Positions 33,290-63,154 of a stretch of 64,000 nucleotides of DNA are shown piece after piece. The notes under the pieces were generated by a model. It saw only the letters and a program-made list of their open reading frames with translations. It did not search any database and was not told the DNA's origin. Origin of the DNA: Octopus sinensis (lineage: Eukaryota); assembly GCF_006345805.1 (NCBI RefSeq), contig NC_042997.1:194184001-194248000 (forward strand). Direction: 5' to 3'. The position numbers and the translations under genes were made by a program. The stretch's first letter is position 1. Each line of letters begins with the position of its first letter.

Positions 33290-33387
33290 AATTGCACAGC
33301 GACCCAAATACAGAAAGGTGTATCGAGTTAGGAAGGAACTGGCTTGGAAATGCTGTCCTGGTTTTAACGGCAACAATTGTGAAAATG
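33290..33387 (+). CDS. COL26A1-like: Exon of EMI-domain collagen (COL26A1/EMID1-like): EMI domain C-terminal half
   Basis: Acceptor ttgtttcgtttcAG, donor G|GTAACG; 98 nt, phase 2 to 1; encodes (R)IAQRPKYRKVYRVRKELAWKCCPGFNGNNCEN, matching the EMI signature RPxY..Y..W-x-CCPG-x-x-G-x-x-C. Confidence 0.9.
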
Positions 33388-34059
33388 GTAACGACTAAAT
33401 TCTTTCACTTCATATTATTCTTACTGATTTATGTAGAAAACCAGCAATTTTGAGGGAGGTGAGGTTAACTGACATCATTGAGGGAGGTGGGGTTAGTTAA
33501 ATGCAGAACAAATACAGCCAGACATTTTATCTGCCGTTCAAGAATTTGGACCTGGAGATCTCCATTTCCAGTGACTTCGAGGGCCACCTCCCAGTGGTGT
33601 CGGGGGTCAACGAAGAGCCCTCGACTACAACAAGACGACCAAAGTTTTTCTTTTTTTTTTCCCCCCAGTCTGGGGTCGCCCGCCCCTAAGCCCTAGACCA
33701 TCACCTAATCACCCTTACCCGTCTTGTTCCTTAACAACAACAACAACGACATTTTATCCGACGCTTTAACGATTCTAGCATAGTCCTGGGTACACTGACC
33801 CTGGGTTAAAAGAAAAAAAAGAGGGATAGTAAATGCTTCGACACCTTTTAACACCTTTAATCATAAGTGTGCTCAATCATTGATGTCCTAGGGGTAAACA
33901 ACAGCAGCAAAAACAACAACAAAAAAATACCGTTAAAAACGGGTCAATGACACTTCTACTTCCGCTTAAGAAGTCAGTATCGTAGCCGCTCACTAATTCA
34001 CCTTATCATCAACATAGCTAAATAGACTTCATAAAAAGTTGTTGTTATTGTTGTTGTTG

Positions 34060-34120
<61 letters not shown>

Positions 34121-34444
34121 CCAACAAACATTTCTTATTCTTAGCAACAATTTTGTCGAGAAGCTAGTTATTCTAAATTCATTGTACTTTACCGTACTTC
34201 TATTTCCGGTCTTAAAATTACTTTCATCGTTCCCGTAATTGCTGTTGAATGACAAATAAAAATCTAATATTTCTTGTTTGCTGTGGGGTTTTTTTTTTTT
34301 TGTCATTTTCTTTTTGCTTTTCTTATGCATTTTTTTTTTGGTGGGGTGGAGGGCTCAGTTTTGCTTTCGTTAAACATTACAGATTTTGTGCTTTTTAAAT
34401 TTTTTTTAATCTTTACTTTTTTTTTTTCTCTCGTTTCATTCCAG

Positions 34445-34506
34445 AATGTTTTAATTGCACAGTTCTGGAAACTATGCAGAACCAAATAAAGCAGTTAGAG
34501 ACACGA
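34445..34506 (+). CDS. COL26A1-like: Exon of COL26A1/EMID1-like gene: CxxC motif plus coiled coil
   Basis: Long pyrimidine tract ending ttccAG, donor CGA|GTAAGT; 62 nt, phase 1 to 0; encodes ECFNCTVLETMQNQIKQLETR, resembling the segment after the EMI domain in vertebrate COL26A1 as I recall it (ECMNCT..LTTLEAK). Confidence 0.9.
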
Positions 34507-35111
34507 GTAAGTATTAAGAATCTCTTATGTTTTTCCCATCTTTTACTTGTTTCAGTTCGTAGACTGCGACCATGCTGGGGCATCATCTGAGAGGTTTTTT
34601 TAGTCGAATGGATCACCCTAGTATTTATTTCTTTTAAAAGCCTGGTACATTGATTGGTTGAAATTGCCGAAATGCAAGAAATTAAAGACCAAATATCTTA
34701 CAAACTATAGAATTTTCTCAATAAAGCCAAGAGAAAAAGATGTTTTATAAACACATTCTACCAGTATACGAAGTTTAAAAGTGTTTAGTTACATAGAAAT
34801 TATTTTAAAAAACTGCCGTTCAAACCGAAAAGATCCCTTATTCTATCGGATCTCTATCACCGAATGGCTAAGTTACGTGGACGTAAACGCACCAATATCG
34901 GTTGTGCATCGATGGTAGGAGTGGGCACACACAAATACACATACACACACATGCGCGCGCATATATATAGTTCACAGATGAGATCCAGATATTCTCTGAT
35001 TAGAATTCACTTTGAAGTGCCCAAAAATTTCAAACTTAGACTCCGATATATGTATATATATATAGAGAGAGAGAGGGAGAGAGAGAAAGAGAGAGAGAGA
35101 GGGAGAGATAG

Positions 35112-35145
<34 letters not shown>

Positions 35146-35511
35146 AGCTATACATCCATATGTTAAATAAATATATATTTAGTCTCGTTGGGAAATTAAG
35201 TACCGGGGATTTACCACAAGGTTTTTGACAGCTTGGAATGTCGACCCGAGTTAGCAAGTCGTCTGTGTTCGCTTGCCTCAAACTAATCCTTTCTACTTAT
35301 AGGTACAAGGCATAAAATTTTGCGTGAGGGGGCGAGTCGATTATATAGACCCCAGTGTTCAACTGCTACTTATTTTATTGACCCCCGAAAGCATGAAAGG
35401 CAATGTCGACTTCGGCGGGATTTGAACTCAGAACTTAAAACCGAAAGAAATGCCGCTGGGCATTTTGTCCGGCGCGCTAACCATTTTGCAATTCACTGCC
35501 TTTCTCCCTCA

Positions 35512-35947
35512 CTCTTTTACTCTTTTTCTTGCTTCAGTCATTTCACTGTGGCCATGCTGGAGCATCACATTTTAGTCGAGCAAATCGACCCCAGGAATTA
35601 TTCTTTGTAAGCCTACTACTTATTCTATTGGTGTCTTTTGCCGAACCGCTAGCTTACGGGGACGTAAACACACCAGCATCGGTTGTCAAGCGATGTTGGG
35701 GGAACAAACACAGACACATAAACATACACACACACACACACGCACACACACACACACATACACACACACACACATACGTATATACGACGGGCTTCTTTCA
35801 GTTTCCGTCTACCAAATCCACTCACAAGGCTTTGGTCGGCCCGAGGCTATAGTAGAAGACACTTGCCCAAGATTCCACACAGTGGGACTGAACCCGGAAC
35901 CATGTGGTTGGTAAGCAAGCTACTTACCACACAGCCACTCCTACGCC
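35512..35947 (-). mobile_element. SINE family A
   Basis: Family match. Confidence 0.9.
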
Positions 35948-36294
35948 CTTGCAAAATAATGGCTTCAACTTTTAGCTCAGCATATTTTGAAGCGAGAAGG
36001 AAGTCGATTGCATCGACCTCAGTACTTAATTTATCGATCCCGAAAGGACGAAAAGGCAAGTCGAGCTCGGCGGAATTTGAACCCAGAACGTAAAGACAGA
36101 CGAAATGCCGCTAAGCATTTTGTCCGGCTTGCTAACGATTCTGCCAGCTGACTGCCTAATTTAAAAGACAGTTGGCCTCGGTGGAATTTGAATATGGAAC
36201 GTAAAGAGAGAAGAAATGCTGCTATACATGTAGTCCGGCATACTAATAATTCTGCCTGCCCGTCACCTTCATCGCCTCCATAATATTCACAGCC

Positions 36295-61032: not shown

Positions 61033-61048
61033 TTACTGCTCGCATTTA

Positions 61049-61280
61049 TATTTCTTTATTGCCCACAGGGGTCTGAACATAGAGGGGACAAACAAGAACG
61101 AACAAAGGGATTAAGTCGATTACATCGACCCCAGTGTGTAACTGGTACTTATTTAATCGACCCCGAAAGGATGAAAGGCAAAGTCGACCTCGGCGGAATT
61201 TGAACTCAGAACGTAGCGGCAGACGAAATACTGCTAAGTATTTCGCCTGGCGTGCTAACGATTCTGCCAGCTCACCGCCT
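61049..61280 (-). mobile_element. SINE family B, full length, T tail, 18-bp TSD
   Basis: TSD ttagttactgctcgcatt at 61029-61046 and 61288-61305. Confidence 0.92.
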
Positions 61281-61485
61281 TAGTTACTTAGTTACTGCTC
61301 GCATTGCCTCCGCTCAGATTAAGAAATGGAACATAGCTCATTTGGAGCACTACAACTCCAGTCTGTTTTATATTTGGAGTATTGTTATTACTAGCGATCT
61401 CTAGATATAATTGTGTATTTTGTATTTCATGCATACATACATACATACATACATACATACATACATACATACATACATACATACA

Positions 61486-61517
<32 letters not shown>

Positions 61518-61526
61518 GCAACAACA

Positions 61527-61932
61527 GTGGAGGCGCAATGGCCGATTGATAACGCAGCGGACTCGCGGTCGGAGGATCGCGGTTTCGATTCCCAGACCGG
61601 GCGTTGTGTGGGTTTATTGAGCGAAAACACCTAAAAGTTCCACGAGGCTCCGGCAGGGAGTGGTGGCGACCCCTGTTGTACTCTTTCGCTCCAACTTTCT
61701 CTCACTCTTTCTTCCTGTTTCTTGTCCCCGACTTCCTACGCAACTGCTGAGCCTGGATGCGCATTCATCCATCCGTCGATGCTCTTGGTGTTGGGGGTTG
61801 ACCTGCTTTCTCTTCTGCGGGTTTTACGAATAGCAAAGGACCACGTTTCGGATTTCTCCCACTACAGAGGCGCTGTCTTGCGAGCTCTGGGACGAAGACC
61901 GCTTCACTCAACAAACAAACAAACAAACAAAC
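61527..61932 (+). mobile_element. SINE family D
   Basis: Match to 21644-22026; TSD agcaacaaca. Confidence 0.88.
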
Positions 61933-62029
61933 AGCAACAACAACTCCAAGTCTTAATATTTCTCCGTTCCAACCAAATTAACACCACGTATACATAGTCA
62001 CCACGTAAGAAAATTTCTCGAATTACTCT

Positions 62030-62900
62030 AAACCAACAAAGTAACAGACCCAAGCGATATTCTTCTCTATACTTATAGAGTTAACTCCTGTTTTCGTCAC
62101 ACGGCTCAGTAATTCCGTCTATACTTAGATTTATCTAAGTCTATCGATACACATGAGAAAAGCCTTTATGATCCTACTAAGTACCGTACTGTCGCGCTTA
62201 CGTTCAACAATACTCCTTCCCTCCTTAGCAACCATCAGTGAAGTTTCACCAGAGCTAAGCTAAAAGAGATTCTTCTTCTGTATATGTCACTGGTGACCAC
62301 TCGCCTTTTTATTCTTATTTTTACTTTGTTGGGCTTTGGTGAACTTATGAGCAATAAAGTCTTCGGCCACATCTGACATCCAAAGCTCTTAGTTAAGTCG
62401 CTTAAATCCGACCTATCTAGTAAACCTTAATTGAGAGGTGTTTTTTCCATCAGACTCGTCAAAAACAGCTTGTGATGTCGGATTTCTTTCTGACCCATAT
62501 TCTATCAACTCAGCAATTATTCAAAGTTCTGTTCTGAGCTCCACACTCTTCATTCTGTGAACAGCATCCCAAACAAGCCATTCGGCTGTTTGATTAAGGA
62601 TCATTCACAAACCGGCCAAGATCACTGATCTTGAAACATGTAGAACCTTCTCTTCGACCTTACAACTACCAATAGTTTCAAACTCTTCTGAACTGTCAAG
62701 TTACCACTACAATCCTTCAGTCTCTTAACATCTCATCATTCATTCTGTATTTTATCTCTCCCCCAACACGATCTCAAGTCCCCGCGAAATCTCTCAGCCA
62801 ACGTTCTCGCTTAGCCCCTCTCAAGTCCTCAACAAACATCACAGCCTGTTTTGTTGAGCTTCAGACCATTTCTTATCAAATAGACCAATAATCGAAAGCT
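62030..62900 (+). mobile_element. Degraded CR1/Jockey-group RT
   Basis: DPTKYRTVALT, a SKxF..HPKLLVK-like segment and SINSAIIQSSVLSSTLFIL (GVPQGS region). Confidence 0.65.
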
Positions 62901-63036
62901 TTCCATCCGTGACCATCATTTTTCAACCCCACCAGTATTTATTTAGAAGTCCGTTTGTATTCCTATATATTCTACATGTATGTGTATATGTGAGTATATA
63001 TGTTTTTATGCATAACTTTTTCTATATACTTTTCAG

Positions 63037-63154
63037 TTTCTACAAGACCAAGTCAGTCACCTACAGGGTGAAATGCTGGATATTAAGAACACATATAGTG
63101 AAGTGAGTTTGCTACGAGATAGGCTTACCTTATTGGAAAAACTTGTAATTAAAG
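63037..63154 (+). CDS. COL26A1-like: Exon of COL26A1/EMID1-like gene: C-terminal coiled coil
   Basis: Acceptor tatacttttcAG, donor AAAG|GTAAGA; 118 nt, phase 0 to 1; FLQDQVSHLQGEMLDIKNTYSEVSLLRDRLTLLEKLVIK with heptad periodicity; LRDRLTLLEKLV resembles the LAERVLILE motif of EMU proteins. The gene continues beyond the window. Confidence 0.85.

What the first reader, a model, noticed from the sequence alone, without database searches (positions are those of the whole stretch)
33290..63154. Hidden EMI-collagen-coiled-coil (COL26A1/EMID1-like) gene in a probable cephalopod
Five exons join without a frame break (phases 2-1, 1-0, 0-1, 1-0, 0-1) into WKCCPGFNGNNCENECFNCT..LETR, collagen x2, ..LRDRLTLLEKLV. 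Four of them are absent from the ORF track. This domain order and the C-x-NCT motif are those of vertebrate EMU proteins. Invertebrate EMI domains are best known from CED-1/Draper/Nimrod-type proteins, so a lophotrochozoan EMU-type collagen would argue for a pre-vertebrate origin (inference). About 760 bp of coding sequence is spread over 30 kb.
Basis: partly seen in the sequence, partly recalled or inferred. Interest (0 to 1): 0.72.

Follow-up and report, generated by a model that had tools for sequence, protein, structure and literature searches.

The report
Octopus collagen XXVI gene, already annotated
The five exons are real and encode part of an octopus matrix protein of the EMI-collagen (collagen XXVI/EMID) family, but RefSeq already annotates this exact gene in two octopus species, so the finding is correct and not new.

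Summary
Five + strand exons (33290-33387, 34445-34506, 44002-44434, 55416-55462, 63037-63154) total 758 nt. They have canonical AG/GT sites and phases 2-1, 1-0, 0-1, 1-0, 0-1, and splice into an open 252-aa peptide. Pfam finds Collagen and the C-terminal third of an EMI domain. The peptide is 100% identical to residues 134-385 of Octopus sinensis XP_036363975.1, "collagen alpha-1(XXVI) chain-like isoform X3". It differs at 9 of 252 residues from O. bimaculoides XP_052829110.1. The first 118 and last 16 residues lie outside the window. A second cephalopod-like genomic contig has the same exons and phases, and spliced ~1.8 kb transcripts from a related species cross the same junctions. The pre-vertebrate origin is not news: collagen XXVI homologues are published for echinoderms, and proteins of this family are annotated in gastropods, a nemertean, arachnids, springtails and amphioxus. 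Verdict: real, ordinary, already known.

The parts
6532..6576 (+). Exon e0: a 45-nt in-frame cassette exon (phase 2->2) encoding (K)CPTNGNGRKRALGG(R). It is used in RefSeq isoform X3 and inserts 15 residues, including a Cys, into the EMI domain.
   Evidence: tblastn of P0248 and P0177; splice sites ttgctttttag| and |gtgcgt; Pfam EMI scores 39.3 bits with it and 51.7 without it; absent from the related cephalopod cDNA.
33290..33387 (+). Exon e1: C-terminal third of the EMI domain (IAQRPKYRKVYRVRKELAWKCCPGFNGNNCEN), phase 2->1.
   Evidence: Pfam EMI 25.9-26.3 bits on profile positions 45-69 of 69; ortholog in L001 at 81% identity with the same boundaries.
34445..34506 (+). Exon e2: (E)CFNCTVLETMQNQIKQLETR, holding the family-specific EC-x-NCT motif (an N-x-T sequon) and a heptad linker, phase 1->0.
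   Evidence: same 62-nt length and phases in L001; C-x-NC(T/S) conserved in the 14-sequence alignment; heptad pattern reached by 21 of 2000 shuffles.
44002..44434 (+). Exon e3: a Cys-containing spacer, collagen run 1 (44083-44208, 14 G-X-Y triplets), a 15-residue interruption, collagen run 2 (44248-44346, 11 triplets) and a non-collagen tail, phase 0->1.
   Evidence: Pfam Collagen 46.5-51.9 bits against a cut-off of 27.2.
55416..55462 (+). Exon e4: a 47-nt micro-exon encoding (G)ENDAQTVTEIEEKLK, the start of the C-terminal heptad helix, phase 1->0.
   Evidence: Exon scan; ortholog NRTETVSEIEEKLK in L001 with the same phases; present in the cDNA of a related species.
63037..63154 (+). Exon e5: FLQDQVSHLQGEMLDIKNTYSEVSLLRDRLTLLEKLVIK, the conserved C-terminal EMU helix, phase 0->1. 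The last exon (DITDKNREMESSHYRT) lies beyond the window.
   Evidence: alignment across phyla; heptad pattern in e4+e5 reached by 5 of 2000 shuffles; no terminal exon in 63155-64000.
33024..33123 (.). A 100-N assembly gap inside the 26.7-kb intron between e0 and e1, 167 bp upstream of e1.

Best explanation
The window is a piece of the Octopus sinensis genome, or of a near-identical member of the O. vulgaris complex. It carries the middle six exons (residues 119-385 of 401) of the single octopus gene of the EMU family, whose vertebrate members are EMID1 and collagen XXVI (EMID2). RefSeq already annotates it as collagen alpha-1(XXVI) chain-like. Shown here: the exon structure, its identity to the RefSeq protein, the domain content, conservation of exons and phases in a second cephalopod-like genome, and spliced transcripts in a related species. 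Inferred from vertebrate EMU proteins: the product is a secreted matrix glycoprotein. A signal peptide and the first two-thirds of the EMI domain would be encoded upstream of the window. The Cys-rich EMI domain would mediate protein-protein contacts and disulfide-linked multimers. The heptad stretches after the EC-x-NCT motif and at the C-terminus would bring three chains into register. The two short G-X-Y runs (14 and 11 triplets) would then fold into an interrupted, flexible triple helix.
For: Splice sites, phases and an open 252-aa frame. 252 of 252 identity to XP_036363975.1 of O. sinensis and 243 of 252 to XP_052829110.1 of O. bimaculoides, both named collagen alpha-1(XXVI). Pfam EMI and Collagen are above their cut-offs, with a complete EMI domain (1-69 of 69) in the full-length protein. 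A collagen-free 80-aa query recovers 77 proteins at E<=1e-3; the 20 looked up by name include COL26A1 or EMID-like proteins from scorpions, springtails, a nemertean, gastropods, amphioxus, a bird and a lizard. The second genomic locus L001 has e1-e4 in the same order with the same phases. Apart from repeat and low-complexity matches, only e1, e2, e3 and e4 match collinearly in tblastx between the two loci. Intronless ~1.8 kb contigs from Logan assemblies of SRA runs (11 contigs; 4 runs shown) encode the full 419-aa ortholog and map onto L001 in four abutting blocks at the predicted junctions. The family signature WC..C..Y..W-CCPG-G-C..C-NC(T/S) and the C-terminal L-x-x-R-(V/I/L)-x-(L/I)-LE helix are conserved from octopus to mammals. 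Heptad periodicity is significant. The vertebrate EMU definition and biochemistry come from PMC13051103.
Against: No octopus RNA-seq reads were examined here, so expression of this particular copy rests on the RefSeq model and on cross-species evidence. Both ends of the gene (signal peptide, N-terminal EMI, last exon) are outside the window. Secretion, trimerisation and matrix binding are extrapolated from mouse and human proteins that share only about 30-50% identity in the non-collagen parts. The word-indexed protein search failed to return the octopus proteins, and the O. sinensis protein could not be located on a contig, so the species assignment rests on protein identity alone.
Confidence: 0.95

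Rival explanations
1. The exons are a decaying pseudogene or a gene-prediction artefact: exon-like ORFs that are no longer, or never were, spliced into a functional mRNA in octopus.
For: The related genomic contig L001 has a one-base frame shift at a G5 homopolymer inside its collagen exon.
Against: All six exons in the window are open, with canonical splice sites and compatible phases. Two octopus species keep the protein at 243 of 252 identity. A related cephalopod expresses a full-length spliced mRNA in several sequencing runs. Apart from repeat matches, exons but not introns are conserved between the window and L001. The L001 shift sits in a homopolymer, where assembly errors are common, and the related cDNA reads straight through that point.
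Confidence: 0.03
2. It belongs to another EMI or collagen family (EMILIN/multimerin, CED-1/Draper/Nimrod, CCBE1, multiplexin) and only superficially resembles EMU proteins.
For: The EMI match on the window-encoded part is only just above the Pfam cut-off (25.9-26.3 bits against 25). Some longer hits of about 900-1040 aa also share the EMI C-terminal motif.
Against: The full-length octopus protein is 401 aa and contains only EMI and Collagen. It has no C1q, EGF, TSPN or endostatin domain. The EC-x-NCT motif and the C-terminal helix are shared specifically with COL26A1-type proteins. Among the 20 collagen-free hits looked up by name, the best-scoring ones are COL26A1 or EMID-like.
Confidence: 0.02

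Closest known systems
Octopus sinensis XP_036363975.1 and O. bimaculoides XP_052829110.1, collagen alpha-1(XXVI) chain(-like) isoform X3 (RefSeq predictions)
   Same: This is the same gene. The window's five-exon peptide equals residues 134-385 of the O. sinensis protein with no mismatch, and has 9 mismatches to O. bimaculoides. Exon e0 accounts for residues 119-133.
   Different: Nothing differs at the protein level for O. sinensis. The window lacks the exons for residues 1-118 and 386-401.
Vertebrate EMU family: EMID1 (Emu1) and collagen XXVI / EMID2 (Emu2)
   Same: The order is the same: signal peptide, EMI domain, interrupted collagen, conserved C-terminal region (definition in PMC13051103). 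The W-CCPG-G-C..EC-x-NCT motif and the C-terminal L-x-x-R-V-x-I-LE helix align.
   Different: Non-collagen identity is about 40-50% over the EMI end and linker. The octopus collagen runs are short (14 and 11 triplets). The octopus has an optional 15-residue insert inside the EMI domain. Whether the invertebrate gene is co-orthologous to both vertebrate paralogues was not tested.
Echinoderm collagens XXVI (PMC10381214, 2023)
   Same: [quoted passage not shown] The crinoid Antedon protein was the best hit of the first search.
   Different: They are deuterostome, not lophotrochozoan, and share only 37% identity with the octopus peptide.
Gastropod 'collagen alpha-1(XXVI) chain-like' proteins (Gigantopelta, Haliotis, Pomacea) and the unnamed or 'EMI domain-containing' proteins of Lottia and Littorina
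   Same: They share the architecture, the ECFNCT motif and the C-terminal helix.
   Different: Gastropods have a reduced N-terminal EMI half with fewer cysteines, at or below the Pfam EMI cut-off. The cephalopods keep the full Cys pattern.

Membership tests
EMU family (EMID1 / collagen XXVI) | N-terminal signal peptide | tested here: inconclusive
   It is not encoded in the window. The identical RefSeq protein has a hydrophobic stretch, ILLLLLLWGCVYTVHA, at residues 54-69 just before the EMI domain. No signal-peptide predictor was available.
EMU family (EMID1 / collagen XXVI) | EMI domain directly after the signal peptide | tested here: met
   The window-encoded part gives Pfam EMI 25.9-26.3 bits (cut-off 25) on profile positions 45-69 of 69. 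The full-length O. sinensis protein gives positions 1-69 of 69 at 39.3 bits, or 51.7 bits without e0.
EMU family (EMID1 / collagen XXVI) | Interrupted collagen (G-X-Y) domain | tested here: met
   There are two runs of 14 and 11 triplets separated by 15 residues. Pfam Collagen scores 46.5-51.9 bits against a cut-off of 27.2.
EMU family (EMID1 / collagen XXVI) | Conserved C-terminal region | tested here: met
   SLLRDRLTLLEKLV aligns with vertebrate LKILAERVLILEHMI, gastropod ILEARIVLLEEIF and arachnid LEARVTILEELL. The e5 region matches Haliotis in tblastn at E=0.005.
EMU family (EMID1 / collagen XXVI) | Nearest relatives are EMU proteins when collagen is left out of the query | tested here: met
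   The 80-aa collagen-free query gave 77 hits at E<=1e-3. The 20 looked up by name include COL26A1 or EMID1-like proteins.
EMU family (EMID1 / collagen XXVI) | Secreted, matrix-bound, disulfide-linked homo- or heterotrimers | not testable with these tools
   This is a biochemical property of the mouse proteins (PMC13051103).
EMILIN / multimerin | C-terminal gC1q domain and long coiled coils (about 1000 aa) | tested here: not met
   The 401-aa octopus protein has only EMI and Collagen in Pfam. PMC3342094 reports no invertebrate matches for that family.
CED-1 / Draper / Nimrod | EMI-like domain followed by EGF repeats and a transmembrane segment | tested here: not met
   There is no EGF match in Pfam for the full-length octopus protein.
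   Pfam finds none of these domains in the full-length octopus protein, and EMI is present instead.

The most novel reading that the evidence does not exclude
The 45-nt exon e0 (6532-6576) may be a real, regulated, octopus-lineage cassette exon. It would drop a 15-residue, Cys-containing, basic loop (CPTNGNGRKRALGGR) into the middle of the EMI domain and so switch the protein's disulfide pattern or binding partners. Separately, no paper in the searchable library describes protostome EMU collagens, so a formal account of the family's bilaterian origin, including the apparently reduced EMI domain in gastropods and the apparently collagen-less springtail members, may still be unwritten.
Probability: 0.3. 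Interest if true: 0.25.

Novelty: already known. Interest (0 to 1): 0.08.

Why it matters
It matters little beyond quality control. It shows that a reader working from raw sequence can reconstruct a five-exon metazoan gene spread over 30 kb and name its family correctly. It also shows that a gene missing from an ORF list can still be publicly annotated. Biologically, the locus adds nothing to what RefSeq already holds. That the EMU (EMID1/collagen XXVI) family predates vertebrates is already published for echinoderms and is plain from existing annotations of molluscs, a nemertean, arthropods and amphioxus.

Tried and rejected
(1) I looked for a second, separate collagen exon between e3 and e5 and found none. 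The only other G-X-Y-like runs are translations of (TGG)n-type microsatellites at about 23.3-23.6 kb and 58.7-58.9 kb. 'Collagen x2' therefore means two runs inside e3.

(2) I considered a shorter e3 ending at 44340 (GGG|gtaaat, phase 0) spliced directly to e5. It is in frame, but the RefSeq protein, the e4 ortholog in L001 and the related cDNA all use the long form plus e4, so I rejected it.

(3) I searched for the N-terminal EMI and signal-peptide exons in 1-33289 with an HMM, with Cys-pattern regular expressions, with an enumeration of phase-2 donors, and with 7-mers of the RefSeq N-terminus. They are not in the window. The same holds for the last exon in 63155-64000.

(4) A raw tblastn of distant homologs against the whole window was swamped by low-complexity hits.

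(5) Both word-indexed searches failed to return the 100%-identical octopus RefSeq proteins, which for a time suggested that the gene was unannotated. The exhaustive HMMER search found them. Absence from the indexed search is not evidence of absence.

(6) Contig look-ups for the Haliotis and O. sinensis proteins returned nothing, so I could not compare intron positions with a gastropod or locate the window on its chromosome.

(7) Literature searches for mollusc or cephalopod collagen XXVI or EMID found no dedicated paper.

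Full report
**What is in the sequence**

Reading the DNA around them gives five exons, each with a polypyrimidine tract and AG acceptor and a GT donor:

| Exon | Coordinates | Length | Phase |
|---|---|---|---|
| e1 | 33290-33387 | 98 nt | 2->1 |
| e2 | 34445-34506 | 62 nt | 1->0 |
| e3 | 44002-44434 | 433 nt | 0->1 |
| e4 | 55416-55462 | 47 nt | 1->0 |
| e5 | 63037-63154 | 118 nt | 0->1 |

They splice into an open 252-aa peptide across introns of 1057, 9495, 10981 and 7574 bp.

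The only other G-X-Y-like stretches in the window are translated microsatellites.

Only e3 sits in a long ORF (183 aa). The other four exons lie in ORFs of 38-48 aa. This explains why they were missing from an ORF listing.

**What it encodes**

Pfam finds Collagen (46.5-51.9 bits, cut-off 27.2) and EMI (25.9-26.3 bits, cut-off 25). The EMI match covers only profile positions 45-69 of 69, so the first two-thirds of the domain must be encoded elsewhere.

The stretch after the EC-F-NCT motif, and the e4+e5 stretch, show heptad periodicity. That periodicity was reached by 21 and 5 of 2000 shuffles respectively.

**Whose genome it is**

A retroelement ORF remnant at 4376-5200 (- strand) is 82% identical to an Octopus bimaculoides protein and 63% or less to everything else.

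An exhaustive HMMER search with a collagen-free 80-aa query (e1 + e2 + the start of e3) found a 401-aa protein that is 99% identical across both splice junctions. Its cluster holds two proteins:
- XP_052829110.1, 'collagen alpha-1(XXVI) chain isoform X3 [Octopus bimaculoides]'
- XP_036363975.1, 'collagen alpha-1(XXVI) chain-like isoform X3 [Octopus sinensis]'

The window's 252-aa peptide equals residues 134-385 of the O. sinensis protein with no mismatch, and differs from O. bimaculoides at 9 positions.

The RefSeq isoform also uses a 45-nt exon at 6532-6576. It has the sites ttgctttttag| and |gtgcgt, is phase 2->2, and encodes CPTNGNGRKRALGG. It lies 26.7 kb upstream of e1.

Residues 1-118 (hydrophobic leader and N-terminal EMI) and residues 386-401 are not in the window. 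The gene therefore overruns both ends of the 64 kb.

This small exon inserts 15 residues, including a cysteine, into the EMI domain. The Pfam EMI score of the full protein is 39.3 bits with it and 51.7 bits without it. A related cephalopod transcript lacks it.

**Independent support for the exon model**

- *A second genomic locus.* A collagen-free search also hit an ORF on an ENA contig (ERZ21867824 ctg87816l, locus L001). L001 carries orthologs of e1 (81% identity), e2, e3 and e4 in the same order. The phases are the same, and e2 has the same 62-nt length.
- *Conservation confined to exons.* In a tblastx comparison of L001 with the window, apart from repeat and low-complexity matches, only e1, e2, e3 and e4 match collinearly.
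- *Spliced transcripts.* A 419-aa ortholog (P0178/P0249) is encoded as one uninterrupted ORF on ~1.8 kb contigs from Logan assemblies of SRA runs: 11 contigs in all, with 4 runs shown. These are spliced transcripts. One of them maps onto genomic L001 in four abutting blocks at the predicted exon boundaries.
- *One blemish in L001.* L001 has a one-base frame shift at a G5 homopolymer in its collagen exon. The related cDNA reads through that point, so an assembly error is the simplest explanation.

**Family placement**

The collagen-free query gave 77 hits at E<=1e-3. The 20 I looked up by name include:
- collagen XXVI of a bird and a lizard
- 'collagen alpha-1(XXVI)-like' proteins of scorpions, a springtail and amphioxus
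- 'EMI domain-containing protein 1-like' of a nemertean
- EMI-domain proteins of Lottia and Littorina

The first search had already shown 'collagen alpha-1(XXVI)-like' proteins in Gigantopelta, Haliotis and Pomacea, and relatives in a crinoid, in spiders and in a centipede.

An alignment of 14 sequences from octopus to mammals shows two conserved elements: the core WC..C..Y..W-CCPG-G-C..C-NC(T/S), and the C-terminal L-x-x-R-(V/I/L)-x-(L/I)-LE helix.

The full-length octopus protein has no C1q, EGF, TSPN or endostatin domain. That excludes EMILIN/multimerin, Draper-type proteins, CCBE1 and multiplexin.

[quoted passage not shown] The features testable here are met.

**How it most likely works**

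This part is inferred from vertebrate EMU proteins and not shown here. The protein is secreted into the extracellular matrix. The EMI domain makes protein-protein contacts and disulfide links. The heptad segments align three chains. The two short G-X-Y runs then form an interrupted, flexible triple helix.

**Novelty**

None at the level of the gene, because it is already in RefSeq for two octopus species.

The evolutionary point is sound but not new. A 2023 review reports collagen XXVI homologues (EMI plus one or two triple helices) in echinoderms that group with human collagen XXVI, in a tree that also includes a hemichordate (PMC10381214). Many protostome members are already annotated. The 2012 statement that no invertebrate matches exist concerns the EMILIN/multimerin subfamily, not the EMU proteins (PMC3342094).

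I found no paper devoted to mollusc or cephalopod EMU collagens. A descriptive gap may therefore remain, but it is a small one.

**Caveats**

- No octopus RNA-seq reads were examined.
- The species call rests on protein identity alone.
- Whether the invertebrate gene predates the EMID1/COL26A1 split was not tested.
- The word-indexed protein searches missed the identical octopus proteins, which is a warning against reading absence from that tool as absence of annotation.

Noticed in passing
window 6532-6576 (+): A 45-nt in-frame cassette exon used by RefSeq isoform X3 inserts CPTNGNGRKRALGGR, with an extra Cys, into the middle of the EMI domain. It lowers the Pfam EMI score from 51.7 to 39.3 bits. 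It is absent from the related cephalopod transcript and was not found in the 10 kb upstream of e1 in L001.
   Followed up: partly
L001 about 14700-14705: The orthologous collagen exon in the ENA contig changes frame by one base at a GGGGG homopolymer. A related species' cDNA reads through in one frame. This is probably an assembly indel, but a real lesion is not excluded.
   Followed up: partly
window 2261-2752 (-) and 4376-5200 (-): Two remnants of the C-terminal part of a retroelement protein. The second is interrupted by a long poly-Ile run from a (TAT/ATA)n repeat. Its best hit is an uncharacterised O. bimaculoides protein at 82% identity, and relatives are widespread in corals, tunicates and holothurians.
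   Followed up: partly
window 15697-16050, 28923-29046, 38206-38966 and other scattered copies: A repeat of about 190 bp, possibly a SINE, has a core like TCGACCCCAGTGCGTAACTGGTACTTA..ATCGACCCCGAAAG and occurs many times on both strands, sometimes in tandem. Its translation (..YCPQGAKHRGDKQGQT..LSRLHRPQC..) keeps appearing as false exon candidates.
   Followed up: no
window 23290-23640 and 58691-58917: GGN/TGG-type microsatellites translate into Gly- or Pro-rich runs that mimic collagen (G-X-Y) and draw spurious collagen hits in tblastn.
   Followed up: yes
window 32019-32235 and 32699-32818, next to the 100-N gap at 33024-33123: Two arrays of a 16-bp tandem repeat (CAGATGTCACATTCTC-like) lie just upstream of an assembly gap that is only 167 bp from exon e1. 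The repeat may be the reason the assembly breaks there.
   Followed up: no
proteins P0180 (Allacma fusca) and P0184 (Orchesella cincta): The springtail family members, one of them named 'Collagen alpha-1(XXVI) chain', show the EMI domain, the ECFNC(S/T) motif and coiled-coil-like sequence but no visible G-X-Y run. This suggests the collagen part was lost in Collembola.
   Followed up: no
proteins P0002, P0004, P0012, P0191 (gastropods): Gastropod members have a shortened N-terminal EMI half with fewer cysteines and fall at or below the Pfam EMI cut-off. Cephalopods keep the full cysteine pattern.
   Followed up: partly
tool behaviour: The word-indexed homology search did not return the 100%-identical octopus RefSeq proteins, even with the full 205-aa query. 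The exhaustive representative search did.
   Followed up: yes
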